Below, one piece after another: positions 8,245 to 48,141 of a stretch of 64,000 nt of DNA (positions within the stretch are counted from its first letter, which is position 1; the number at the start of each line of letters is the position of its first letter). Below the pieces are notes generated by a model that was not told where the DNA came from, made no database searches, and saw only the letters and a program-made list of their open reading frames with translations. The position numbers were made by a program, and so were the translations under genes. The DNA is taken from the IMG/VR virus record IMGVR_UViG_3300010403_000705, positions 368,845 to 432,844 of that record; one strand, written 5' to 3'.

Positions 8245-9057
8245 ATGATTATTGATTGTCACGCACATATTGGAAAGAACGAGCATATTAATTTTTCTGT
8301 TCATCAGTTACTTAAATCAATGGATAAAGCAAAAATAGATAAAACTTTAGTATTTGCTGGAAAGATAAATGACTGCTCTAACGAATGGATGTTAGAACAA
8401 ATTGCTCCATATAAAGATAGACTATATGGAGTCGCAGCGGCTGATATGGCTGGTGGACCAATCACTTGGAGACAAGGAGTTCCATCAATGACTGAGCTTC
8501 AAGATGAAGCAAGTAAAATTACTGATTGGTATGCAGAAGGCAAAATTATTGCCTGTAAATTTTATACTGGTTATCATCACTATTACCCATTTGATAGATT
8601 AATAGAAGATTATTTATCTTCTTTAGAAGAGGTTGGTTGCCCAGCTATTTTTCATTGTGGTGATTGTTTGTGTTCAATTAAAAATGCTAAACTTAAATAC
8701 GCGCACCCATTACATATAGATGATATAGCGGTAGATTATCCAAATATGAATTTTGTTATTGCTCATGTTGGATTCCCTTGGGTAGATGATACTGCTGAAG
8801 TTTGTTATAAAAATAAAAATGTTTATACTGATATTTCTGGATTTGTATATAATGAATTTGATGTTGAATCTAAAGTAAAATTTTCTAATATGATATCTAA
8901 ATTTCTGGATATTGCTAGTAATAATAAATTGCTATTTGGAACGGATTGTCCAATTTCCAATCAACAATCATATAGAGAAACAGTGGAAGATTTATTAGGA
9001 TCTATTATTTTCGAAAATATGCAAAAAAATATAAGAACAGTATTTAATTTGAAATAA
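8245..9057 (+). CDS. Amidohydrolase family protein (Amidohydro_2)
   Basis: IDCHAH, FHCG, IAHVGFPW, VYTDIS, LLFGTDCP. Confidence 0.85.
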   Translation: MIIDCHAHIGKNEHINFSVHQLLKSMDKAKIDKTLVFAGKINDCSNEWMLEQIAPYKDRLYGVAAADMAGGPITWRQGVPSMTELQDEASKITDWYAEGKIIACKFYTGYHHYYPFDRLIEDYLSSLEEVGCPAIFHCGDCLCSIKNAKLKYAHPLHIDDIAVDYPNMNFVIAHVGFPWVDDTAEVCYKNKNVYTDISGFVYNEFDVESKVKFSNMISKFLDIASNNKLLFGTDCPISNQQSYRETVEDLLGSIIFENMQKNIRTVFNLK

Positions 9058-9129
9058 TATGTTTATTATAATTGAGTATTTTATTACTACGTTCACTATG
9101 ACAATTAGCACATACTAATTCACATTTAT

Positions 9130-9318
9130 CTATTTCAGAAAATATAATACTCAATTTTCATAAATTTAAATATAACAAAATTCTTGTAAAGTGATGTTAG
9201 AAAATATTATATGACTCTGATACCCATCTCCAATCAGGATGACTACGTTTCAGTGGTATCAAAAATTCTTCCGGAAGAAATCTTTTTCGAAAATCTAAAA
9301 AAAGTTTTTAAGTTATAA
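9130..9318 (+). pseudogene. Frameshifted remnant of a second amidohydrolase C-terminus
   Basis: KILYDSDT/PISNQDDY...IFFENLKKVFKL matches KLLFGTDCPISNQQSY...IIFEN...TVFNLK of the upstream gene; 5' limit approximate. Confidence 0.55.
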
Positions 9319-9336
9319 TTTAATAGAAGAATTAAT

Positions 9337-10677
9337 ATGAATAGAGTTAGATTTGCTCCCAGCCCTACTGGATCTCTTCATGTAGGAGGAGTTCGTACAG
9401 CCTTATATAATTGGTTATGGTCTAAGAAAATTGGTGGTCAATTTATATTACGTATTGAAGATACTGATTTTATTAGAAATGATCCATCAAGTTATGATAA
9501 TATTTTACGAACTTTAGATTGGTTAGGTTTACATTGGGATGAGGGTCCAGATATTAATGGTAAATTTGGTCCTTATACTCAATCAGATAGGCGAGATTTT
9601 TATAAGGCATTTGCAAATTCTTTAATTGCTGATGGCAAAGCATACCGTTGCAATTGTAGTATGCAACAATTGATGCAATGGAAATCGCAATCTCCTAATT
9701 GGAAATATCCTGGCATTTGTAGGGACAAGAATATTGACTCTAGTAACTCACATGTTGTAAGACTAAAAGTAGATACTGATGCTATAATTTCATATAATGA
9801 TTTAGTTTTTGGAAAAATAACAACTCCTACATCCTCATTATATGATTTTGTTTTGCTTAGGGAAAATGGTATTCCACTTTATAATTTTGCAGCTGTTGTG
9901 GATGATCATTTAATGCATATTGATTTAGTAGCTAGAGGTCGTGATCATATGATTAATACTCCCAATCAAATTTTATTATATAATGCTTTTGGCTGGGACC
10001 TCCCATCGTTTGCGCATCTTCCTATGCTATTAAACATGCAAGGAGACAAACTTTCTAAAAGAGATGGATCAGTCTCAGTAAATGAGTTTAGAAAACTTGG
10101 ATTTTCTGCCAACGGGTTATTAAATTATTTATTAAGATTTGGTTGGTCTCACGGTGACCAAGAACTTTTCTCTATGGGGGAAATGATTGAATTGTTTTCT
10201 TGGGAATCATGTAAAAAATCGGATGGTCGATTTGACATGGCAAAAGCACTTGCTATTAATGGTAAAAACTTGATGAGGTCCAATTTAGTATCTAATGAAA
10301 CATATATTAAAGATTTAGCGTCATTTGGAATTTGTGCAGATGATAAAATTATTGAAATGGTACGAGCCAAGGCTAAGTCCTACCTAGAAGCAAAAGAATT
10401 ATTATCCTTTTTGGTAGATGGTGCATTAACTAATTATCCTATGGATATTCCAGAAGATGGAAAAATTCATATCAGCAATTTGTTAAAAATTTACTCGCAA
10501 CTATCTTTAATAGATAAAGATGCATTAGTATTAGCGACTAAATCTTATTGCCAAGAAAATAATTTAAATTTTCCAAATATTTCTCAATTGTTAAGACATT
10601 ATTTTACTGGTAAAACGATTGGTCCAGATATTTATAAAATTATAGAATATTTATGTCATTACAAAAATATCCATTGA
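9337..10677 (+). CDS. gltX: Glutamate--tRNA ligase
   Basis: RFAPSPTG, HVGG (HIGH), LRIEDTD, YNFAAVVDD, KLSKR. Confidence 0.93.
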   Translation: MNRVRFAPSPTGSLHVGGVRTALYNWLWSKKIGGQFILRIEDTDFIRNDPSSYDNILRTLDWLGLHWDEGPDINGKFGPYTQSDRRDFYKAFANSLIADGKAYRCNCSMQQLMQWKSQSPNWKYPGICRDKNIDSSNSHVVRLKVDTDAIISYNDLVFGKITTPTSSLYDFVLLRENGIPLYNFAAVVDDHLMHIDLVARGRDHMINTPNQILLYNAFGWDLPSFAHLPMLLNMQGDKLSKRDGSVSVNEFRKLGFSANGLLNYLLRFGWSHGDQELFSMGEMIELFSWESCKKSDGRFDMAKALAINGKNLMRSNLVSNETYIKDLASFGICADDKIIEMVRAKAKSYLEAKELLSFLVDGALTNYPMDIPEDGKIHISNLLKIYSQLSLIDKDALVLATKSYCQENNLNFPNISQLLRHYFTGKTIGPDIYKIIEYLCHYKNIH

Positions 10678-26155: not shown

Positions 26156-26291
26156 TAAAATGGCAAAATTATGGTTTTTAAAGTTTAAAAAAGATAATCG
26201 ATGTTAAAAAAATAACTAGGACTAAGTTATATCATTATCATTAATTATCTGTTTATCGTTGAAATTTTTGTTCAAATATAAGGAATGTATT

Positions 26292-27851
26292 ATGTCTTCA
26301 AAAAAGTTATTTTCTAATAAGTCTGTGGATGTTAAGTTAGTTAAACCAACTGATACAGTAAATAATGCTGGTGGTCAAGCCTATTCTTTAGATGATAAGG
26401 CAGCCTTGGCTCAATTAGCCATGACGGGATGTTTCAATGGTACTTATTATGTTTCTGATGAAGATCAATTAAAAAAAGTATTAGATTTAGCAAATAAATT
26501 GCCAGCAAAATATGTTGCACAACTAGCTGTTTATTCTCGTCAATATGGTTTAATGAAAGATATGCCAGCAGTTTTGGCAGCGGTAGTGGCAGGTAAGGAT
26601 TCAGATCTTTTATCAAAAATTTTTGATAAGGTAGTAGATTCCCCCAAAATGTTAAGAAATTTTGTACAAATTCTTCGTTCAGGAGTAGTAGGTCGCAAAT
26701 CTTTAGGCACTAGACCTAAGAAATTGGTTCAAAAATACCTTGAATCTTTAACTGACGAACAATTATTTATGGCTGATGTTGGAAACGACCCATCTTTACA
26801 AGATGTAATTAAATTGGTTCATCCTAAACCAACTACCAAACAACGTTCTGCTATGTTTGCATATCTCTTAAATAAAGAATATTCCCAGGATGATTTATCT
26901 TTATTAGTAAGACAATTTGAGGACTTTAAAAAGGACATGTCCAAGGACATTCCTAATGTACCTTTTCAAAAATTAACTGCTTTACCACTTACTTCTGATC
27001 ATTGGAAAAAAATTGCTTCAAATGCCACTTGGAATCAAATCAGACAAAATCTTAATACATTCGCTCGTCATAATGTCTTAAGTGATCAGGCATTATTGAA
27101 TCTTATATGTTCTAGAATAGAGGATAAGGAATTAGTTAAAAGAGCTAGAGTATTTCCTTATCAGCTTTTTACCACGTTTCAAAATTTGGAATCAAGTATA
27201 CCAACTAAGATCTCAGTTGCTTTACAAAAAGCTGCTGAACATGCATTGGAAAATATTCCAGAATTTAAAGGTAAAGTCTATGTTATGGTAGATACTTCTG
27301 GTTCTATGAGTTCGCCAGTGACTGGTAAACGTGGTACAGCTACTACAAAAATGTCTTGCATTGATGTTGCTGCTTTAGTGGCGGCAGCTATAATGAGAAA
27401 AAATTCTGATGTAGAAGTATTACCTTTTGATACTAAAGTTCATACACATAAACTGAATCCACTTGATTCGATTATGACTAATGCAAAGATTTTATCTGCT
27501 TTTGGTGGAGGAGGTACGAATTGTTCTCTTCCATTACAAGAATTGAATCGTAGAAAAGCCATGGGAGATTTAGTTATTTATGTAAGTGATAATGAATCTT
27601 GGGTTGATTCTAGCAGAGGAAAGGGGACTGCAACTATGAATGCTTGGGAAGTTTTTAAAGCTCGTAATAGAAATGCAAAATTAGTTTGTATTGATTTGAC
27701 ACCCAATACTTCTACACAAGTTTATTCTAAAAAAGACGTTCTTAACATCGGAGGTTTCTCAGATTCTGTATTTGAAGTGATAAATAAGTTCATGGAGTAC
27801 GGAAATGACGCAAATCTATGGATTAGAACAATTGAGCAGATTAAACTTTAA
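26292..27851 (+). CDS. Ro60/Rsr TROVE-vWA RNA-binding protein
   Basis: NNAGGQAY, LAQLAMTGCFNGTYY, ARVFPYQL, VDTSGSM MIDAS, GGGGTNCS, SDNESW, IGGFSD. Confidence 0.92.
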   Translation: MSSKKLFSNKSVDVKLVKPTDTVNNAGGQAYSLDDKAALAQLAMTGCFNGTYYVSDEDQLKKVLDLANKLPAKYVAQLAVYSRQYGLMKDMPAVLAAVVAGKDSDLLSKIFDKVVDSPKMLRNFVQILRSGVVGRKSLGTRPKKLVQKYLESLTDEQLFMADVGNDPSLQDVIKLVHPKPTTKQRSAMFAYLLNKEYSQDDLSLLVRQFEDFKKDMSKDIPNVPFQKLTALPLTSDHWKKIASNATWNQIRQNLNTFARHNVLSDQALLNLICSRIEDKELVKRARVFPYQLFTTFQNLESSIPTKISVALQKAAEHALENIPEFKGKVYVMVDTSGSMSSPVTGKRGTATTKMSCIDVAALVAAAIMRKNSDVEVLPFDTKVHTHKLNPLDSIMTNAKILSAFGGGGTNCSLPLQELNRRKAMGDLVIYVSDNESWVDSSRGKGTATMNAWEVFKARNRNAKLVCIDLTPNTSTQVYSKKDVLNIGGFSDSVFEVINKFMEYGNDANLWIRTIEQIKL

Positions 27852-31348: not shown

Positions 31349-32047
31349 ATGAAAAAAGATTTTACTTCAATTAATGTAGTTTTAGATGCTAGTGGCTCAA
31401 TGGGACGTTTGGTTGATGATACAATTGGTGGTTTTAATAATTTTCTAAAAGACCAACAAGCTCTGGCGGGTGAGGCAACTCTATCTTTATGTTTGTTTAA
31501 TGACGATTATAAATTAATATACGATTATGTACCAATTACTCTAGCACAACCGTTAGATAAAAAAGTTTATAGAGCTTCTGGCGGTACAGCTTTATTAGAT
31601 GCTTTAGGAATTACTATTGATAATGTTGGCAAAAAACTTTCAGAAATGAAAGAAAAAGACAGACCTTCAAAAGTTATTTTTCTGGTTATCACGGATGGTC
31701 AGGAAAATTCTAGTCATTTATTAGGAGAATCAGAAGCTAGCTTGCCTAAATTTGTGCAAGGACAACATAATATTTATAAATGGATTGAAAAAGATAATGA
31801 AATTTTTTATAAAAGAAAGCTACGTTATCCTTTGTCACGCATCAAAGATATGATTACTCATCAGCAACAAAAATATAATTGGGAATTTTTGTATTACGGT
31901 GCTAATGTTAATTCAATAGCTGAAGCAAAAACTTTAGGAATTGTTGCGGCTCGCAGCCAAAGTTATAGTGCTACTTCTGTAGGGACTAAGGATTTATATA
32001 ATAGTATTTCTAATACAGTATTAGACTATAGAACAGGTAAAAAATGA
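31349..32047 (+). CDS. vWA domain protein
   Basis: LDASGSM, GGTALLDA, ITDGQENSS, WEFLYYGAN. Confidence 0.85.
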   Translation: MKKDFTSINVVLDASGSMGRLVDDTIGGFNNFLKDQQALAGEATLSLCLFNDDYKLIYDYVPITLAQPLDKKVYRASGGTALLDALGITIDNVGKKLSEMKEKDRPSKVIFLVITDGQENSSHLLGESEASLPKFVQGQHNIYKWIEKDNEIFYKRKLRYPLSRIKDMITHQQQKYNWEFLYYGANVNSIAEAKTLGIVAARSQSYSATSVGTKDLYNSISNTVLDYRTGKK

Positions 32048-32481: not shown

Positions 32482-32558
32482 GGAGGAGTAGCTCAGTGAA
32501 AGAGCACGATGCTATAAACATAACGAGGTCCTTGGTTCAAGTCCAAGCTCTTCCACCA
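32482..32558 (+). ncRNA. tRNA-like RNA, bulged anticodon stem (nominal anticodon ATA)
   Basis: Intact acceptor, D and T arms and CCA; anticodon arm CGATG-CTATAAA-CAT-AA-CG. Confidence 0.65.
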
Positions 32559-34255: not shown

Positions 34256-34364
34256 AGCAAGAATAGTTTAATGGTAGAACGCTGGAGTCCATCCAGAAGC
34301 GGTACAAAAAGAATCCACGTGCACTGGGTAAAAAAATTCTTAGGTTCAAATCCTCCTTCTTGCT
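34256..34364 (+). ncRNA. tRNA-shell RNA with enlarged variable region
   Basis: AGCAAGAA/TTCTTGCT, D arm TAGTTTAATGGTAGAAC, CTGGA-GTCCA-TCCAG, ~45-nt insert, AGGTTCAAATCCT. Confidence 0.6.
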
Positions 34365-34669: not shown

Positions 34670-34744
34670 AGAGTAATAGTTTAATGTAAAGAATAGCCTC
34701 ATTAACAGAGGAAGATTTTGGTTTAAATCCAAATTACTCTACCA
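34670..34744 (+). ncRNA. Atypical tRNA (nominal anticodon TAA, short variable loop)
   Basis: AGAGTAA/TTACTCT-ACCA, loop ATTAACA, T-loop TTTAAAT. Confidence 0.6.
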
Positions 34745-36227: not shown

Positions 36228-36300
36228 CAGAATATGTGGTCTAAGGGCAGGGCAGGTGGAAGTGTTCATCACGTTCAGGTTCGATTCCTGACATATTCTG
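36228..36300 (+). ncRNA. tRNA-like RNA with shrunken anticodon loop
   Basis: CAGAATATG/CATATTCTG, TCAGG-TTCGATT-CCTGA; loop of 4-6 nt; no CCA. Confidence 0.6.
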
Positions 36301-36306
36301 TTTTAT

Positions 36307-36382
36307 CGGGAAATGTTGTAATCTGGTAGCATCCGTGCTCAGGAAGCATGTAGTATGAGTTCAAATCTCGTTTTCCCGACCA
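36307..36382 (+). tRNA. tRNA-Pro(AGG), C33/A37
   Basis: CGGGAAA/TTTCCCG-ACCA, loop TCAGGAA. Confidence 0.8.
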
Positions 36383-36494: not shown

Positions 36495-36502
36495 TATACT
36501 AT

Positions 36503-36587
36503 GGATCTGTTCTCTAGCGGCAATGAGAAGAGCCTTTTAAGCTCTCGGCGAAAGCCTACGTGGGTTCGAGTCCCTCCAGATCCACCA
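36503..36587 (+). tRNA. tRNA-Lys(TTT) with long variable arm
   Basis: Loop CTTTTAA, variable stem GGC-GAAA-GCC, CCA. Confidence 0.85.
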
Positions 36588-36674
36588 CATCAAAACGATG
36601 TAGTAAGAAAATGAATATAGATTACGATTTTCTAGATATTATGATGTTACAATATTTGAATAGAGAGATAACAA

Positions 36675-36914
36675 ATGAAGTCAAGGTATATAAATAATTC
36701 TGCAATGAATAGTGCTGAATTTGGAAAATTCATGCAAAGTGAAGAAACTAAAGCCGCCATAGAAGAAGGATATAATATTATTAATATTAAAGGTTATACA
36801 AAAGGCAGTGGATCGGAAGTTTGTTATTGTGTTTCTATGAAAAAACCTTTTTTTAAATTTATTTGTGACGAGATAAATTCTACTATAAGACTATGGTTTA
36901 TGTTAGATAAATAA
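36675..36914 (+). CDS. Hypothetical protein
   Basis: 79 aa ORF. Confidence 0.55.
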   Translation: MKSRYINNSAMNSAEFGKFMQSEETKAAIEEGYNIINIKGYTKGSGSEVCYCVSMKKPFFKFICDEINSTIRLWFMLDK

Positions 36915-36920
36915 TTTTAT

Positions 36921-36995
36921 TCCTACCTAGCTCAATGGTAGAGCGTTCGGCTGTTAACCGAATGGTTCCAGGTTCGAGTCCTGGGGTAGGAGCCA
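36921..36995 (+). tRNA. tRNA-Asn(GTT)
   Basis: Canonical cloverleaf, G73, CCA. Confidence 0.95.
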
Positions 36996-37003
36996 ATAAA
37001 TAG

Positions 37004-37096
37004 CATGGAGGATACCAGCAGCGAGAGCAGCTTACCTTAAGTGGCAACTGGATAAAATCTTCCCAAAGTAGTTTGCTCAAACTACATAGATCCATG
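37004..37096 (+). ncRNA. Structured RNA between tRNAs
   Basis: CATGGA/TCCATG, CCAG/CTGG, GTAGTTT-GCTC-AAACTAC. Confidence 0.4.
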
Positions 37097-37125
37097 ATAT
37101 AACATGGTTATACTATTTATTCTAT

Positions 37126-37201
37126 GGTACGTTAGCTGGCTTGGTGCAGCGCCCGCCTGTTAAGCGGATGACGGAGGGTTCAATTCCCTCACGTATCGCC
37201 A
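37126..37201 (+). tRNA. tRNA-Asn(GTT), second type
   Basis: Loop CTGTTAA, G73, CCA. Confidence 0.88.
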
Positions 37202-37251
37202 TCATGATTTGTGAATAAAATATATTCATATAATGATATATAATTAGAAAT

Positions 37252-37326
37252 AGCTTCATCGTTCAATGGTTAGGACACTGGCTTGTCACGTCAGTAATGA
37301 GGGTTCGATTCCCTTTGGAGCTGCCA
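37252..37326 (+). tRNA. tRNA-Asp(GTC)
   Basis: Loop TTGTCAC, CCA. Confidence 0.92.
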
Positions 37327-37421
37327 ATAAACATAATTAGGTATGTAGTAATTTTATAATGTTTATTCCCAGAACTTATCACTAGTCAAGGCAAAGTATA
37401 GTAATAATAATTCATTACAAT

Positions 37422-37739
37422 ATGAATATTTCTCAATTATGCAAATTAGCAGACAAGTTTGAAGAAAAAATTAAATTAGCTACTGCTAGTAATAGTTGCT
37501 CACGTTGTAATGATATTCATTGTTGTATGAATTTTGGTAATTCTCATAGTCTAGATCAAGATAATAATGAGGCAAAATGTGAGGGTTACAAAAAATCTCC
37601 TGTAGGATCTCCGAGACAAAGATCTTTTTGTGCAAGACATTGTGCTATGAAAAAACAAAGAACTTCTATAGAAGTTGCAAATGATCCAGAATCTTGTATT
37701 AATAAAGGTTTAAGGCGTTGGAAATGCCGTTGTGGTTGA
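37422..37739 (+). CDS. DUF6321-like Cys-rich phage protein
   Basis: RQRSFCAR...DPESCINKGLRRWKC. Confidence 0.6.
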   Translation: MNISQLCKLADKFEEKIKLATASNSCSRCNDIHCCMNFGNSHSLDQDNNEAKCEGYKKSPVGSPRQRSFCARHCAMKKQRTSIEVANDPESCINKGLRRWKCRCG

Positions 37740-37769
37740 TATAAAACAACTACATAAATAGTGATATAT

Positions 37770-37845
37770 AGGTGTGTAGCAATTCGGCAATTGCACTTGC
37801 TTGTCAAGCAAGACCAAGCGGGATCGACACCCGTCATGCCTGCCA
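37770..37845 (+). tRNA. tRNA-Asp(GTC), second type
   Basis: Loop TTGTCAA, T-loop ATCGACA, CCA. Confidence 0.85.
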
Positions 37846-37848
37846 TAT

Positions 37849-37924
37849 AGTCCATTAGCTCAGGGGTTAGAGCGCCTGTCTTATAAACAGGAAGTCGTTG
37901 GTTCAATTCCAACATGGACTACCA
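37849..37924 (+). tRNA. tRNA-Ile(TAT)
   Basis: Loop CTTATAA, CCA. Confidence 0.9.
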
Positions 37925-38100
37925 TATTATACTAAAAACGCAAGATTGCGATACTATAAAATTGGAGTGTCAATCATGAAAAAAGTCATCAATAACTTGA
38001 TGTGTTCGCTATGCTATCTGCTACCATTACACAATACAAAATATTGTGTTTGTCCATGTCATTGGGATTAAATATTAGTACATAATAATATTTCATACAT

Positions 38101-38322
38101 ATGAAAAAAATGCAAGATTGTGATTTTGTCGTAGGTTTTAATAATAAAGGAATCTATGTTTTAAAAGATAGAAATTCATTTTCAGATGAAATTGCTATAA
38201 CATTTCAAGAATTTTTTCATAGATTATCTGATTATTCTTTATATTTAGAGCCAATAAAGATATTCGAGCCTCTAATACAATTTATGTATAAAAAAATTAT
38301 CTCGTTGAAATGTTTTTTATAA
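38101..38322 (+). CDS. Hypothetical protein with C-terminal F-x motif
   Basis: Ends KKIISLKCFL*. Confidence 0.6.
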   Translation: MKKMQDCDFVVGFNNKGIYVLKDRNSFSDEIAITFQEFFHRLSDYSLYLEPIKIFEPLIQFMYKKIISLKCFL

Positions 38323-38330
38323 AATAAAAT

Positions 38331-38579
38331 GCGATTGTGGTGAAAGAGGAAAACACACCATCAAAAATGTTAAAAGAAGATGGCATATTAAAAATGGCAT
38401 CATAGTATTTTTTAATATAAGCTTTATAAGGTGATGCCTAGGAAAGATATATTTATAAAATATGTAACGGGTTTGCGGAAGCACCGGACAGGGTTTTGAC
38501 AAGTTCTGTAGGGAAGCGCGTTTGCCTAATAGTTATAGTGTGATGTTATATACGGGTTCAAATCCCGTCAATCGCACCA
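38331..38579 (+). ncRNA. 249-nt tRNA-shell RNA with pseudoknotted insert
   Basis: GCGATTG/CAATCGC-ACCA, D arm, ACGGG-TTCAAAT-CCCGT; ~190-nt structured insert. Confidence 0.75.
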
Positions 38580-38715
38580 TTTTGCAAATTTAGGATATAT
38601 GATGCATTATAATATAATAAATGCTCATAATGAAATTGTGCATATTAAGAGATATAAAGTAAGAAGAAGTATGATAGAGAAATTGGTATAAGTAGAATAC
38701 AATAATTTAAGTTAT

Positions 38716-38792
38716 CGTCCTTTAGCTCATTTGGTTAGAGCGCCGTTCTGATAAGGCGGAGGTGCTGGGATCGTAGCCCAGGAGGACGACCA
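38716..38792 (+). tRNA. tRNA-Ile(GAT)
   Basis: Loop CTGATAA, T-loop ATCGTAG, CCA. Confidence 0.9.
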
Positions 38793-38805
38793 ATTAGAAA
38801 ATAAC

Positions 38806-38881
38806 GGCACTGTCGTATTTGTGGTCAAGACTCGGGTCTGAAAAGCCCAGAAAAGCGGATCGTTACCGCTCGGTGCCGCCA
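38806..38881 (+). tRNA. tRNA-Phe(GAA), divergent
   Basis: Loop CTGAAAA, T-loop ATCGTTA, G73, CCA. Confidence 0.8.
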
Positions 38882-38884
38882 TTA

Positions 38885-38961
38885 GGGTTTGTAACTCAAT
38901 TGGAAGCAGTAGCTGGCTCTTAACCAGTGTTGTGAGAGTTCGAGTCTCTCCAGACCCACCA
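38885..38961 (+). tRNA. tRNA-Lys(CTT)
   Basis: Loop CTCTTAA, CCA. Confidence 0.9.
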
Positions 38962-39026
38962 CAAAATAAATATATGTGAAAGATTACATTTTATTTGTAA
39001 TTTACAAATTCTTATAATCTATAAAT

Positions 39027-39134
39027 ATGAGTACATAACAATGTGCTCAATGTAAATTAGATAATGAATTATTAGAATTCAATTCCAAAGGTAATAGAAA
39101 GTTTGCTAGCAAATGTAAAATTTGTTTGGTATAA
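39027..39134 (+). pseudogene. Remnant of the zinc-finger N-terminus typical of phage HNH endonucleases
   Basis: MST*QCAQCK...EFNSKG...SKCKICLV*. Confidence 0.5.
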
Positions 39135-39200
39135 AATGGTCTTTCTAGTTTTTGTTGTTTCATATTTTTTATTTTAAATTAGTAAAAGATATAAAAAATT

Positions 39201-40112
39201 ATGTCAATAGATCAATCGTTTAATTATTTGACTTGGAAATATTCAGATAAACCTGATACATCATTAATTTGTTATTTAAAAATTGATTTATCTTTGAGAA
39301 AAGATAATTTATATGTAGGTTCGGGACTGGGTGGAGATCCTTCCCAATTTTTCTTCTTATTAACCAAAAAGATAAAAACAAAGTGGTCAAACGATTCTAA
39401 TATTCATGTATATTTAGATGAAAAAAATTCAGATGAATTAATTTTTGAATTACCAAAGTCTTCCGATGAAAGTATTAATACAGATCTTCTTTCCCCTAGA
39501 AAAGCTTTGAATAGTTTTTGGGATAATTATACAACAAAAATAGAAGTTACTTTTAAGCAACTTATTGATTCGTCTTTTCTTAAGAACCAAAATTCTGATT
39601 CTATAGATTTGTATTTTTTGATAAAAGCAGTGGAAATAGCAAAGGATATAGTTTTCTGTTTAAATCACGCTGAAAAATTTATGAGTGACATATCTAATTT
39701 TTTTGTCGTAGAATATAAAGATATAGAGAAACAGTACTTAATAGAAGTTGGCTTGCCACTTAATTATTTTGAAAAATTTGATGCATTAGAGCTACAAGAA
39801 AATAAAATAGGATATTCTTATGAACCAAATTATGTGCGAAGTGCATTGCAGAAACATCCGATTTGGGGTACTAAATTAAAAAATATAGGTAAAAGAGAAT
39901 CTAGCATTTTAGATCAATTACTAAGTGAACAAGTTATGCAAAAATTTGATCTTATTGGTTCTTTTCCTCCTTATGTTGTTGGGTATGTAATACGCTATGT
40001 TATTTCTTTAGAAAGAATTGTTAAATTTGATTTAGATAAAAAAATTACTTTGTTTTCTGAAATGACAAAAATGTTTCAAACTCTTGAATTAAATGATGAT
40101 GAAAAGACATAA
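39201..40112 (+). CDS. Hypothetical protein
   Basis: 303 aa ORF. Confidence 0.7.
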   Translation: MSIDQSFNYLTWKYSDKPDTSLICYLKIDLSLRKDNLYVGSGLGGDPSQFFFLLTKKIKTKWSNDSNIHVYLDEKNSDELIFELPKSSDESINTDLLSPRKALNSFWDNYTTKIEVTFKQLIDSSFLKNQNSDSIDLYFLIKAVEIAKDIVFCLNHAEKFMSDISNFFVVEYKDIEKQYLIEVGLPLNYFEKFDALELQENKIGYSYEPNYVRSALQKHPIWGTKLKNIGKRESSILDQLLSEQVMQKFDLIGSFPPYVVGYVIRYVISLERIVKFDLDKKITLFSEMTKMFQTLELNDDEKT

Positions 40113-40362
40113 ATTAAAAGATAATTTAGGGAAGAATAAAATTTTCTATATTCATATCTCTAATATTCGTACTCCACTACAAACTATTGAAAATTCATAC
40201 TTAATAGAAGGTCCAAAATCAAAAGAAGATTTTGAAGATTTTAGGTATGAAAATTGGGAGGAACAGATTACTAATTTAGATGAAAAAGATGCATTATTAG
40301 CTTTGACTAAACATGAAGCCGAAAAGCTACAAGCTAGATTAGCCAGGATGCTCTCAGAATGA
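40093..40362 (+). CDS. Hypothetical protein
   Basis: 89 aa ORF. Confidence 0.6.
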   Translation: MMMKRHKLKDNLGKNKIFYIHISNIRTPLQTIENSYLIEGPKSKEDFEDFRYENWEEQITNLDEKDALLALTKHEAEKLQARLARMLSE

Positions 40363-40598
40363 GAGTAGGATTAGAGATAGATATCTCAGGTAGACGTAAG
40401 TGTCGCTACCATAACTGTGATAAAAATCCTGAATATATTGCACAGAATGGAAGAATAAAAAAAGGAACTACCTGTGCCTGGATTTCTGTAGAAGATGCTA
40501 GCGGTTCTTCTTGTGGATATTATTGTAGAGGTTGCATAGATAAAGTTTATGCAGACTTAAAGAAAATACTAAATCCTAATTTATGGGTTTTTCATTAA
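40359..40598 (+). CDS. Zinc-binding (PARP-type finger-like) protein with C-terminal F-x motif
   Basis: SGRRKCRYHNC...IKKG...YCRGC; ends NPNLWVFH*. Confidence 0.6.
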   Translation: MRVGLEIDISGRRKCRYHNCDKNPEYIAQNGRIKKGTTCAWISVEDASGSSCGYYCRGCIDKVYADLKKILNPNLWVFH

Positions 40599-47070: not shown

Positions 47071-47438
47071 ATATAGTTGGTTAAGATAATCGCTGCCAAT
47101 TTTAATTGGGAGAGGAAGTTCCGAACACCAATAAAGCAGAGTGCCAGTTAACGGCTGGGTGCAGTGATGCAACTGAAAGTGTAACAGAAAATAAACCGCC
47201 TGTAAAGGTAAGGGTGAAATGGTGAAAAATGGCGAACTAAGAGTGCGCCATGTGTAAGAGACCACCGCATATTTGGTAACAAATATGGCAATACAAACCA
47301 CACTCGGTGCAAGACAAATAGAAAACGTTTGAGAATCGCTTATTCGATGTTTTCGGGTTGTTGCTTGATCCAAATAGTGATATTTGGACTAGATTAATGA
47401 TTATCCTAGACAGAATTCGGGCTACTTATTAACTATAT
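47071..47438 (+). ncRNA. rnpB: RNase P RNA (bacterial type A-like)
   Basis: GAGGAAGTTCCG(AAC), GAAAGTGTAACAGAAA, AGGGTGAAA, GTGCAAGAC, ACAGAATTCGGGCTA; P1 ATATAGTTGGT/ATTAACTATAT. Confidence 0.92.
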
Positions 47439-47472
47439 TTCTTTTATAAAAGTTATCTAAAACATCAATACC

Positions 47473-48141
47473 ATGAAAATACCTCTTATTTATCCCAAAA
47501 TTCCTAATGGTAATAATTGCACTCTTAAAGAATGTACCGCTTTTGAGAAATTAGATGGCACCAATATTCATTTTGTATGGGAAAAATTGGCGTACCAAAT
47601 ATTAGGAAACGGGTGGGTTTCTTTTGGTACAAGGCGTGATAGTTTTTCTTTGGAAACAAAAGAAATAGATAATTTTGTATTTAAACATCCAAATTTGAAA
47701 TTGGTTATACCAGATTTTGAGGATAGATTAAGTGAAGATTTAAATAAAAAATTTGGTTCTTCTAATTATGAGAGAGTCCGTTTGTTTACAGAGTTCTTAG
47801 GAGCCAATTCTTTTGCGGGCACACATGATAAAAATGAAAAACAATATCATACAATAATAGATTTGCAAATAGATCAGCAATTAGGCGATAATTCTTTTCT
47901 TGATCCAAAATCATTTATTAATGGGTATAAAATGTTTGGTATACCAAAAGTAGTATACCAGGGTAAATATACTGGGCAATTTGTACAAGATGTGAGGACT
48001 GGAAAATATTTAGTTAATGAGGGTGTAGTTTGTAAAGGTATTGTAGATAATAAAATCTATAGAGTAAAAATTAAAACTGATGCTTATTTAAGAAAATTGA
48101 AAAACGTATTTCATAATTCTTGGCAAGATTATTGGGAATAA
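47473..48141 (+). CDS. RNA ligase-like nucleotidyltransferase
   Basis: YPKI, FEKLDGTN (motif I), EGVVCK, KIK. Confidence 0.75.
   Translation: MKIPLIYPKIPNGNNCTLKECTAFEKLDGTNIHFVWEKLAYQILGNGWVSFGTRRDSFSLETKEIDNFVFKHPNLKLVIPDFEDRLSEDLNKKFGSSNYERVRLFTEFLGANSFAGTHDKNEKQYHTIIDLQIDQQLGDNSFLDPKSFINGYKMFGIPKVVYQGKYTGQFVQDVRTGKYLVNEGVVCKGIVDNKIYRVKIKTDAYLRKLKNVFHNSWQDYWE

What the first reader, a model, noticed from the sequence alone, without database searches (positions are those of the whole stretch)
38331..38579. 249-nt tRNA-framed RNA with an H-type pseudoknot and multi-branch domain
Seen: perfect acceptor GCGATTG/CAATCGC-ACCA and T arm. The insert has stem 38385-38394/38409-38418, whose loop GGCATCAT pairs with GTGATGCC (38431-38438), followed by a TAGG/CCTA-closed domain of three hairpins. 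It resembles tmRNA in architecture but lacks G3:U70 and an evident tag ORF, and I see no group I intron core. Inference: a novel large tRNA-like ncRNA or an unknown intron type.
Basis: partly seen in the sequence, partly recalled or inferred. Interest (0 to 1): 0.82.

Follow-up and report, generated by a model that had tools for sequence, protein, structure and literature searches.

The report
tRNA-shaped partner RNA of phage Ro60
The 249-base element is a real, conserved, unannotated RNA built on a complete tRNA frame, whose relatives sit directly in front of Ro60 genes in other phages, so it is most likely a new architectural type of Y RNA and not an intron or a tmRNA.

Summary

The element is not an orphan. 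A near-invariant core (GCACCG ... UGUAGGGAAGCGCGUU, window 38481-38522) led to at least 43 distinct relatives of 152-267 nt. They occur in Streptomyces phages, soil viral contigs and Myxococcota genomes, and all are tRNA-framed and unannotated. None matches Rfam 15.

Compensatory changes support the acceptor stem, the anticodon-like stem, the helix closing the large arm and the T stem. The large domain sits in the variable-arm position. The anticodon-like loop is 8-17 nt and lacks U33, so this is neither a decoding tRNA nor an anticodon-loop intron. tmRNA and group I tests are negative.

The same loop has an 11-bp partner (38539-38549) where relatives have a covarying long-range helix.

The functional lead is Ro60. 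In ten loci from four sequence groups a Ro60/TROVE gene lies 0.06-3.3 kb downstream on the same strand, often with YrlA-like RNAs upstream. The window's own Ro60 gene lies 10.5 kb upstream.

Best reading (about 0.6): a tRNA-framed Y RNA. Binding is untested.

The parts
38331..38337 (+). Acceptor stem, 5' strand (GCGATTG)
   Evidence: It pairs perfectly with 38569-38575. The homologous stem has compensatory changes in 6 of 7 pairs across 24 relatives.
38340..38356 (+). D arm: 3-bp stem GTG/CAC with a loop carrying A14, R15 and G18G19, preceded by U8
   Evidence: Read from the sequence and drawn by ARAGORN -i. The D stem is invariant in relatives.
38358..38383 (+). Anticodon-like hairpin: stem CCATC/GATGG with a 16-nt A-rich loop (AAAAATG...) and no U33
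   Evidence: The homologous stem shows compensatory changes in 4 of 4 pairs. Loops are 8-17 nt and carry an A-rich AAAAC/AAAACGG-type motif at or near the 5' end in nearly all relatives (L037 is an exception).
38385..38418 (+).
   Evidence: The complementarity is read from the sequence. The positional analogues are CAATC-GGAA-GGTTG in L010 and CCTC-GAAA-GAGG in Myxococcota copies. There is no covariation evidence for the window's own stem.
38394..38404 (+).
   Evidence: It forms 11 bp with 38539-38549. This occurs in 27 of 2000 shuffles. RNAfold finds it when only the tRNA frame is imposed.
38430..38438 (+). GGTGATGCC segment, shared with L010 (GGTGATGCT) and positionally with GGGTGTGGGG of Myxococcota copies; partner unresolved
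Evidence: Alignment A3.
38468..38487 (+). Core hairpin GGGTTTGC-GGAA-GCACCGG, containing the invariant GCACCG (38481-38486)
   Evidence: GCACCG was part of the search pattern, so its presence in the collected members is by construction. The hairpin loop varies among members (GGAT, AGAA, GGAA, AGAG) while the flanks are constant.
38488..38509 (+). Core helix ACAGGGTTT / AAGTTCTGT with loop TGAC
   Evidence: It forms 9 bp in the window. Long forms keep ACAG/CTGT and short forms have ATGG/CTGT, which are one-sided, wobble-compatible changes.
38510..38526 (+). Near-invariant string AGGGAAGCGCGTT followed by TGCC
   Evidence: It is identical in all members retrieved, and part of it was the search pattern. 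The core 38468-38526 is about 58% G+C by my count, in a genome of about 30%.
38539..38549 (+). 3' strand of the proposed long-range helix (TGTGATGTTAT), ending 2 nt before the T arm
   Evidence: At least 10 long-form relatives have a helix of different sequence ending 2-3 nt before the T arm (and manual reading for L010, L022, L026, L027 and L050).
38552..38568 (+). T arm (ACGGG TTCAAAT CCCGT)
   Evidence: There are compensatory changes in 4 of 5 pairs in relatives.
38569..38579 (+). Acceptor 3' strand CAATCGC, discriminator A and encoded CCA
   Evidence: CCA is also encoded in L015, L027, L052, L054 and L056.
26259..27851 (+). Ro60-type protein gene (TROVE plus Ro60 vWA domain): the proposed protein partner, 10.5 kb upstream on the same strand
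   Evidence: Pfam PF25045 at 6e-18 and PF05731 at 6e-6. It is 48.5% identical to the Ro60 that follows the family member in L050 after 64 nt.

Best explanation
The element is a stable non-coding RNA of a huge soil phage, built on a complete tRNA frame. The frame comprises an acceptor stem, a D arm, a closed anticodon-like hairpin, a T arm, discriminator A and an encoded CCA. A roughly 165-nt domain is inserted at the variable-arm position.

Proposed mechanism:
- It is transcribed with the phage tRNA array and trimmed like a tRNA, with RNase P at the 5' end. This is inferred from the frame.
- Its near-invariant core, a bulged helix carrying GCACCG-(G/A)A and AGGGAAGCGCG, is the docking site for the phage's Ro60 ring protein. 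This is inferred from gene neighbourhood in relatives and from a resemblance to the CGAA / GGUCCGA Ro60-binding motif.
- The resulting particle would act as Y RNA-Ro60 particles do elsewhere. It would gate Ro60's RNA-binding cavity or tether Ro60 to another enzyme such as a 3'-5' exoribonuclease, for RNA quality control or repair during infection. This is by analogy only.
- The tRNA shape would give nuclease resistance and possibly a second interaction surface.

Shown here: the frame, the family, the covarying helices and the genomic association with Ro60.

Not shown: expression, end processing, Ro60 binding or any downstream activity.
For: Family:
- The core matched unannotated gaps in Streptomyces phages.
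- Pattern scans then gave at least 43 distinct tRNA-framed members.

Structure:
- 98% of cells are paired and 20 pairs change on both sides, against 0 of 500 shuffles. Slid controls fall to 22-46% paired.
- A long-range helix with a different sequence in each member ends 2-3 nt before the T arm.

Ro60 link:
- Profile search of all fetched loci finds a TROVE gene downstream on the same strand. It follows immediately or within 0.3 kb in L050, L008, L018, L034, L070 and L007/L060. It lies about 0.9 kb away in L038 and 3.0-3.3 kb away in L013, L045 and L049.
- GiJojo has an annotated Ro-like gene 2.7 kb downstream.
- Comrade has one 9.6 kb upstream of the element, same strand.
- Satis and Francob also have one.
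- TROVE hits occur in only 336 of 50,697 phage records.
- Sub-threshold YrlA matches (E 3.5e-6 to 3.5e-2) lie just upstream of the element on the same strand in L008, L007, L018, L070 and L049. The element therefore sits inside Y-RNA clusters, in the position nearest the Ro60 gene.
- The window has a Ro60 gene but no YrlA match anywhere, so this element is its only Y RNA candidate.

Motif:
- Short forms carry CACCGAAUGG.
- Known Y RNAs are recognised through GNCGAAN0-1G, GGUCCGA or 'CGAA' on the 5' strand of a bulged helix (PMC4201824; PMC12135203).
Against: - No binding or expression data exist. No RNA-seq run holding the sequence was listed.
- In the window, Comrade and Satis the Ro60 gene is 10-40 kb away, beyond the 4 kb typical of known Y RNAs.
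- Ro60 genes and this RNA both live in tRNA arrays, which inflates co-location.
- Four Myxococcota genome copies have no TROVE gene within the 8-kb loci held.
- So do several viral loci with long flanks (L010, L015, L019, L046, L048, L056, L057).
- The window's motif is CCGGACAG, not CGAA.
- The first G of GNCGAA is A throughout the family.
- The RNA ends form an acceptor stem, not the Ro60-binding stem as in all described Y RNAs.
- The Rfam Y_RNA and YrlA models do not match.
- Myxococcus phage Mx1, which has the closest GenBank Ro60, has no member within 12 kb of its TROVE gene.
Confidence: 0.6

Rival explanations
1. It is a tRNA-scaffolded RNA whose conserved core acts independently of Ro60. 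Possible roles are a decoy or sponge for a tRNA-binding host factor (a defence nuclease, a modification enzyme, a synthetase or EF-Tu), a small-molecule aptamer, or a ribozyme. On this reading, its proximity to Ro60 reflects only that both genes reside in phage tRNA and RNA-metabolism regions.
For: - The core is nearly invariant from a 30% G+C huge phage to phages of Streptomyces and Myxococcota chromosomes. This fits a universally conserved target.
- Many loci have no TROVE gene in the flanks held, including four bacterial genome copies.
- The distance to Ro60 is 10-40 kb in the window, Comrade and Satis.
- The encoded CCA and full tRNA frame would allow interactions with the translation apparatus.
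Against: Immediate same-strand adjacency (64-300 nt) to Ro60 recurs in several sequence-divergent groups, and the element is embedded among YrlA-like RNAs. This is hard to explain by array co-residence alone. Every complete phage genome checked that carries the RNA also carries Ro60.
Confidence: 0.22
2. It is a tRNA gene interrupted by an intron in or beside the anticodon loop. Splicing would give tRNA-Thr(AGU), using CCATC (38358-38362) paired with GATGT (38542-38546), or ARAGORN's tRNA-Gly(GCC).
For: - ARAGORN -i calls a tRNA with a 160-nt intron.
- In-silico joining of 38362/38363 to 38535/38536 gives a 77-nt cloverleaf with anticodon AGT.
- G1-C72, C2-G71 and A73 match E. coli threonine identity elements (my knowledge).
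- No tRNA-Thr is called in the window.
Against: - ARAGORN accepts dozens of different junctions with different anticodons, so the call is uninformative.
- There is no group I core in Rfam.
- There is no U at -1 or G at omega for either model.
- In 24 of 24 short relatives the would-be 5' anticodon strand pairs with its immediate neighbour, with compensatory changes. The big arm is closed by its own covarying helix at the variable position.
- Relatives cannot be spliced into a tRNA with a 7-nt loop and U33.
- Acceptor identity is not conserved across the family.
- The only assembly that could be checked carries the full-length form.
Confidence: 0.05
3. It is a divergent phage tmRNA or a tag-less tmRNA-like ribosome-rescue RNA.
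For: It has a tRNA-like frame with CCA, a large internal domain, and possible pseudoknot-type pairings. Tag-less tmRNA-like RNAs are known from a mycobacteriophage (PMC11915505).
Against: - ARAGORN tmRNA mode is negative even at a relaxed threshold.
- The Rfam tmRNA models match only the T arm.
- G3:U70 is absent in the window and inconsistent in the family.
- It has a proper D stem, unlike the tmRNA tRNA-like domain (my knowledge of tmRNA).
- I found no reading frame with a plausible tag.
- The conserved core has no tmRNA counterpart.
Confidence: 0.03

Closest known systems
YrlA (Rfam RF02553), the tRNA-mimicking bacterial and phage Y RNA bound by Ro60/Rsr
   Same: It is encoded upstream of Ro60 on the same strand, often several RNAs in a row. 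It contains tRNA-like D and T arms able to form the elbow. It is found in actinobacteriophages. A CGAA-type motif is proposed for Ro60 contact (PMC4201824).
   Different: - In YrlA the RNA ends lie in the stem that takes the anticodon-arm position, and the acceptor-like stem is closed by a loop. Here the ends form a 7-bp acceptor stem with discriminator and CCA, the anticodon-like arm is closed, and the presumed Ro60 module is a separate arm in the variable position.
- The YrlA model does not match any member.
- YrlA-like RNAs co-exist with the element in the same loci.
[quoted passage not shown]
   Same: The processed YrlA species also exposes an acceptor end with CCA. YrlB lies between YrlA and rsr and has a possible T arm (PMC4201824). 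This is the same relative position as the element in L008, L007 and L070.
   Different: The M. smegmatis RNA becomes two pieces. Here a single chain has native acceptor ends. I could not obtain the YrlB sequence, so homology was not tested.
Deinococcus radiodurans Yrn1
   Same: It is a Y RNA with some tRNA-like features, and its closed stem-loop between the D and T elements occupies the anticodon-arm position, as here (PMC4201824). It is co-transcribed with a tRNA.
   Different: Yrn1's terminal stem is the Ro60-binding bulged helix, not a 7-bp acceptor with CCA. It has no large variable-arm domain and no sequence similarity was detected.
tmRNA
   Same: It is a large RNA whose 5' and 3' ends form a tRNA-like acceptor/T-arm domain with CCA, enclosing a structured insert.
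   Different: The element has no G3:U70, no tag frame, a true D stem and a closed anticodon-like arm. It is negative in ARAGORN and Rfam.
Phage T4 species 1 and 2 stable RNAs (rnaC, rnaD) in the tRNA cluster; recalled from memory, not tested
   Same: They are stable RNAs of unknown function encoded within a phage tRNA cluster and matured by the tRNA-processing enzymes.
   Different: No sequence or structural comparison was made here, and no Ro60 link is known for them.

Membership tests
Canonical decoding tRNA | 7-bp acceptor stem, discriminator, CCA, D arm with G18G19, and T arm with a TTC-type loop | tested here: met
   Read from the sequence and drawn by ARAGORN -i.
Canonical decoding tRNA | 5-bp anticodon stem with a 7-nt loop, U33 and an anticodon; detection by the tRNA covariance model | tested here: not met
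   The loop is 16 nt (8-17 nt in relatives) and starts with AAAA, without U33. Default ARAGORN and Rfam tRNA do not call 38331-38579.
tmRNA | G3:U70 alanine identity pair | tested here: not met
   The window has G3:C70. Only a few relatives, such as L008 and L038, have G3:U70.
tmRNA | Tag reading frame after pseudoknot 1; recognition by ARAGORN or the Rfam tmRNA models | tested here: not met
   ARAGORN -m at -ps80 finds nothing. Rfam RF00023 matches only 17 nt of the T arm, at 10.5 bits.
Group I intron in a tRNA gene | Conserved catalytic core (P3-P8, P4-P6, P7) detectable by Intron_gpI | tested here: not met
   There is no hit at E up to 10 on 38250-38660.
Group I intron in a tRNA gene | U (or C) at -1 in P1 and G at omega, with exons that join into a canonical tRNA | tested here: not met
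   The junctions needed for a 7-nt loop are preceded by U or A, not G. Relatives cannot yield canonical tRNAs.
Y RNA (Ro60 partner, in the broad sense) | Encoded close to a Ro60/TROVE gene on the same strand | tested here: met
   For the family, 10 loci lie within 0.06-3.3 kb and GiJojo at 2.7 kb. For the window itself the distance is 10.5 kb on the same strand, which is weaker.
Y RNA (Ro60 partner, in the broad sense) | Conserved Ro60-contact motif (GGUCCGA, GNCGAAN0-1G or CGAA) on the 5' strand of a bulged helix | tested here: inconclusive
   Short forms have CACCGAAUGG next to a helix. The window has CACCGGACAGG. The first G of the published motif is A in all members (motif from PMC4201824 and PMC12135203).
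Y RNA (Ro60 partner, in the broad sense) | Stem formed by the 5' and 3' ends carries the Ro60 site | tested here: not met
   The ends form a tRNA acceptor stem.
Y RNA (Ro60 partner, in the broad sense) | Physical binding to Ro60 and Ro60-dependent accumulation | not testable with these tools
   This requires biochemistry. No RNA run was listed.
YrlA (RF02553) | Match to the YrlA covariance model, with its permuted tRNA-like topology | tested here: not met
   No YrlA hit overlaps any member. The YrlA hits in L008, L007, L018, L070 and L049 are separate neighbouring elements.

The most novel reading that the evidence does not exclude
The family is a previously unrecognised class of tRNA-like RNA that is matured and possibly aminoacylated like a tRNA. 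It would use its invariant 50-nt arm to bring Ro60, or another conserved factor, to the translation or tRNA-repair machinery. That would be a direct mechanistic bridge between Ro60 RNPs and tRNA or ribosome surveillance, exploited by phages and present in Myxococcota. Alternatively, the core is itself a new ribozyme or aptamer.
Probability: 0.15. Interest if true: 0.85.

Novelty: new variant of a known kind. Interest (0 to 1): 0.62.

Why it matters
Ro60 is conserved from bacteria to humans, where it is a lupus and Sjogren autoantigen. What its Y RNA partners do, and why bacterial ones mimic tRNA, is still open.

If this is a Y RNA, it would be a third way of combining a tRNA shape with a putative Ro60 module. 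It is the only one that keeps native acceptor ends and CCA.

- This makes testable whether the tRNA mimicry serves processing and stability, or engagement of tRNA-binding machinery.
- The family occurs in cultivable Streptomyces phages (Comrade, GiJojo, JustBecause and Satis), so experiments are feasible.
- It fills unannotated gaps in at least 16 GenBank phage genomes.
- Default tRNA finders and Rfam both miss this class of 150-270-nt genes in phage tRNA arrays.

Tried and rejected
- Rfam at gathering and at E-value thresholds on the element, the whole window and relatives gave nothing for the element.
- ARAGORN in tmRNA mode was negative. In intron mode it is over-permissive: many junctions and anticodons are accepted.
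- Megablast of the region against phages found no match.
- Exact 21- and 22-mers from the core and from the T arm/acceptor in IMG/VR found only the source contig, IMGVR_UViG_3300010403_000705.
- The downstream 303-aa ORF has no relatives in IMG/VR or in the 5.8-billion-protein set, so it gave no synteny route.
- No paralogue exists inside the window.
- Sequencing-run search found only the source DNA sample and no RNA run.
- Promoter and terminator scans were at chance level.
- Literature searches found no description of the family or of its core string. The newly described tRNA mimics (skipping-rope, DUF2693-FD, salivarius-1) are different RNAs.
- Resemblances of the core to SRP RNA domain IV, 23S rRNA, the 11-nt tetraloop receptor and a loop E motif were considered from memory. 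I dropped them for lack of any model hit.
- Model R1 mis-aligns the 5' half of long members, so long forms were parsed with an anchor-based script instead.
- Mx1 and mycobacteriophage ET08 Ro60 loci contain no family member.
- Two Ro60/Y RNA review articles could not be read because they are not held.

Full report
**Context.** The window comes from a soil viral contig of about 433-448 kb, IMGVR_UViG_3300010403_000705. It is about 30% G+C. The window holds:
- 24 ARAGORN tRNA calls, mostly in an array at 32.3-39.0 kb;
- a bacterial type A RNase P RNA;
- two aminoacyl-tRNA synthetases, EF-G, a Ro60/TROVE protein, a PARG-like protein, an ADP-ribosylglycohydrolase and an RNA ligase.

The element at 38331-38579 lies inside the tRNA array. 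It starts 9 nt after a 73-codon ORF and ends 136 nt before tRNA-Ile. An independently assembled 84.5-kb Logan contig from the same sample covers 36500-40500 without a difference.

**The observation.**
- The acceptor stem, ACCA and T arm are exactly as described.
- Default ARAGORN and Rfam do not call the element. tmRNA, group I and the large ornate RNA families give no hit at E up to 10.
- ARAGORN with intron search calls 'tRNA-Gly(GCC) with a 160-nt intron'. When I joined exons in silico at 280 junction combinations, it accepted about a hundred of them, with many different anticodons. That call therefore carries no weight.
- One junction gives a tidy 77-nt tRNA-Thr(AGU). I treated this as a serious rival until comparative data came in.

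**Finding relatives.** Close-match searches found only the source contig. A sensitive blastn against GenBank phages matched the G+C-rich centre of the element (window 38466-38522). The match was 77-80% identical and fell in unannotated gaps of Streptomyces phage genomes. Reading those gaps showed that each is also tRNA-framed, and none matches Rfam.

A string shared by all of them then served as a search pattern:
- IMG/VR;
- one genome per species;
- JGI metagenomes.

After removing chance hits in coding DNA, a script extracted 41 distinct full-length tRNA-framed elements. A covariance model added two more full-length elements and several fragments.

Members fall into two groups:
- short forms of 152-171 nt, from Streptomyces phages and soil viral contigs;
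- long forms of 173-267 nt, including four Myxococcota or Deltaproteobacteria genome copies (two on Polyangiaceae contigs, one of 5.4 Mb), a 148.9-kb viral contig (L010, the closest relative) and the window.

**Structure of the family.** On 24 short forms the proposed structure is 98% paired. Twenty pairs change on both sides (0 of 500 shuffles reach this), and slid controls fall to 22-46% paired.

| Helix | Pairs with compensatory change |
|---|---|
| Acceptor stem | 6 of 7 |
| Anticodon-like stem | 4 of 4 |
| Helix closing the big arm | 6 of 6 |
| T stem | 4 of 5 |

- The D stem and the core never vary, so they give no evidence either way.
- The big arm lies between the anticodon-like arm and the T arm, which is the variable-arm position.
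- The anticodon-like loop is 8-17 nt in nearly all members. It carries an A-rich AAAAC/AAAACGG-type motif at or near its 5' end and lacks U33.
- Long forms add a small GNRA-capped hairpin after the anticodon-like arm.
- They also add a long-range helix whose 3' strand ends 2-3 nt before the T arm. Its sequence differs in each of at least ten members, for example CACATGAA/TTCATGTG, GGCGGACT/AGTCCGTC and GCACGTC/GATGTGC.
- The AAAACG of the loop could pair with the CGUU that follows the invariant GCGCG. All 24 short forms allow it, one through A-U changing to G-U. The window allows it through a C-to-U change that gives U-G. Without double changes this remains a hypothesis.

**What this means for the window.** The family-conserved parts are the frame, the CCATC/GATGG hairpin, the GGAA-capped hairpin (38468-38487), the 9-bp helix 38488-38496/38501-38509 and the invariant AGGGAAGCGCGTT (38510-38522).

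- A match of that length arises in 43% of shuffles.
- L010 has a tetraloop at that position.
- The same loop nucleotides (38394-38404) form 11 bp with 38539-38549, ending 2 nt before the T arm, which is the geometry of the family's long-range helix.
- That pairing arises in 1.4% of shuffles.
- RNAfold chooses it as soon as the tRNA frame alone is imposed.
- Energies of the competing models differ by only a few kcal/mol, so thermodynamics does not decide the matter.

The partner of GGTGATGCC (38430-38438) remains unresolved. This segment is conserved in L010.

**Intron and tmRNA.** The intron model needs CCATC to pair with GATGT (38542-38546). In every relative the homologous strand pairs with its immediate neighbour and covaries. 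The big arm has its own closing helix. No relative can be reduced to a tRNA with a 7-nt loop, and acceptor identities differ widely. There is no group I core and no U(-1)/G(omega). The tmRNA tests fail as listed in the membership table. I rate these two readings at 0.05 and 0.03.

**Function.** The window's Ro60-type protein (26259-27851) prompted a test. A tblastn search and then a profile search of all fetched loci found TROVE genes beside the element, downstream and on the same strand:
- L050 (64-nt gap; this protein is 48.5% identical to the window's);
- L008, L018, L034, L070 and L007/L060;
- L038 (about 0.9 kb);
- L013, L045 and L049 (3.0-3.3 kb).

These loci belong to four groups with different acceptor stems. 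Among complete phage genomes:
- GiJojo has an annotated Ro-like gene 2.7 kb downstream;
- Comrade has one 9.6 kb upstream of the element, same strand;
- Satis and Francob are among the TROVE hits.

Only 336 of 50,697 phage records have any TROVE hit.

In L008, L007, L018, L070 and L049, Rfam gives sub-threshold but significant YrlA matches just upstream of the element on the same strand. The order is therefore YrlA-like RNAs, then the element, then Ro60. That is the arrangement described for Y RNAs (PMC4201824). The window has no YrlA match at all.

Short forms carry CACCGAAUGG beside a helix. This recalls the GNCGAAN0-1G, GGUCCGA or CGAA Ro60-contact motif (PMC4201824; PMC12135203). The match is imperfect, and the window has CCGGACAG.

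**Cautions.**
- The Ro60 link is genomic only.
- Both genes favour tRNA arrays.
- Several loci with long flanks, and the four bacterial copies, show no TROVE gene in the DNA held.
- Distances in the window, Comrade and Satis exceed those of known Y RNAs.
- Mx1, whose Ro60 is the closest in GenBank phages (46.7% identity), has no member within 12 kb.
- My scans required an exact core, so the apparent invariance of the core is partly an ascertainment effect. More divergent members will have been missed.

**Verdict.** The element is a genuine member of a conserved, apparently undescribed family of tRNA-framed RNAs (confidence about 0.95). Its most likely role is as a Y RNA-type partner of phage Ro60 with a new topology (about 0.6). 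It is not an intron, a tmRNA or a decoding tRNA.

Noticed in passing
window 47073-47440 (+): A full-length bacterial type A RNase P RNA (247.5 bits, E 2e-79, 39% G+C) is encoded by what appears to be a huge phage. It lies next to an RNA ligase gene (47473-48141) and an HNH endonuclease.
   Followed up: no
window 34257-34364 (+): A 108-nt tRNA-like gene (Rfam tRNA, 38.7 bits) that default ARAGORN misses. It has about 40 extra nt in the variable region, a non-canonical anticodon loop and a weak T stem. It may be another tRNA-framed RNA of a different kind.
   Followed up: partly
window 32482-32558, 36307-36382, 36229-36300, 34670-34741: Unusual tRNA calls: Tyr(ATA) and Pro(AGG) with A34, one tRNA with an undetermined anticodon, and one tRNA found only by Rfam. 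No tRNA for Thr, Gly or Val is called in the window.
   Followed up: no
L008 2562-2671 and 2829-2895; L007 2203-2322 and 1759-1824 (-); L018 424-493; L070 3515-3581 and 3979-4048; L049 2695-2804 and 2374-2436 (-): Sub-threshold YrlA-like matches (28-42 bits, E 3.5e-6 to 3.5e-2) are clustered upstream of the tRNA-framed element and Ro60 in soil viral contigs. They suggest multi-RNA Ro60 loci.
   Followed up: partly
L073 (Myxococcus phage Mx1) about 9005-9089 and about 9250-9338: Two unannotated tRNA-like elements of about 85 nt have an acceptor stem, a T arm and a hairpin CCUGCUU-GAAA-AGCAG followed by UGUGUGU. They lie 2.7-3 kb upstream of the TROVE gene. They recall the CCUGCUACC ... GGGUGUGGGG module of the long forms, and one gives a weak Rfam tRNA-Sec hit.
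   Followed up: partly
L034 and L070 (both from contig Ga0310811_10000041, 216 kb): Two identical copies of the element, each followed by a Ro60 gene, occur on one contig. This could be a duplication or a terminal repeat of the assembly.
   Followed up: no
L013 1836-1962, L019 4292-4410, L048 3414-3536, L033 3651-3764, L063 1291-1455, L071 1313-1418: Model R1 gives tRNA-level scores to elements of 105-165 nt in the same arrays. These are further over-long tRNA-framed genes with other inserts.
   Followed up: no
L062 2084-2237 (-): A copy that keeps the core, T arm and acceptor 3' strand but has unrelated, apparently coding sequence in place of the 5' half. It looks like a truncated or recombined member.
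   Followed up: no
L006, L014, L016, L017: Four viral contigs share the 17-mer CTGTAGGGAAGCGCGTT within a different, mutually conserved context that has no tRNA frame. Its significance is unknown.
   Followed up: no
window 31349-32047 and L073 7925-8578: A small vWA-domain protein gene lies in the Ro60/tRNA-array region (about 4 kb from the Ro60 gene) in both the window and Mx1. It may be part of the same module.
   Followed up: no
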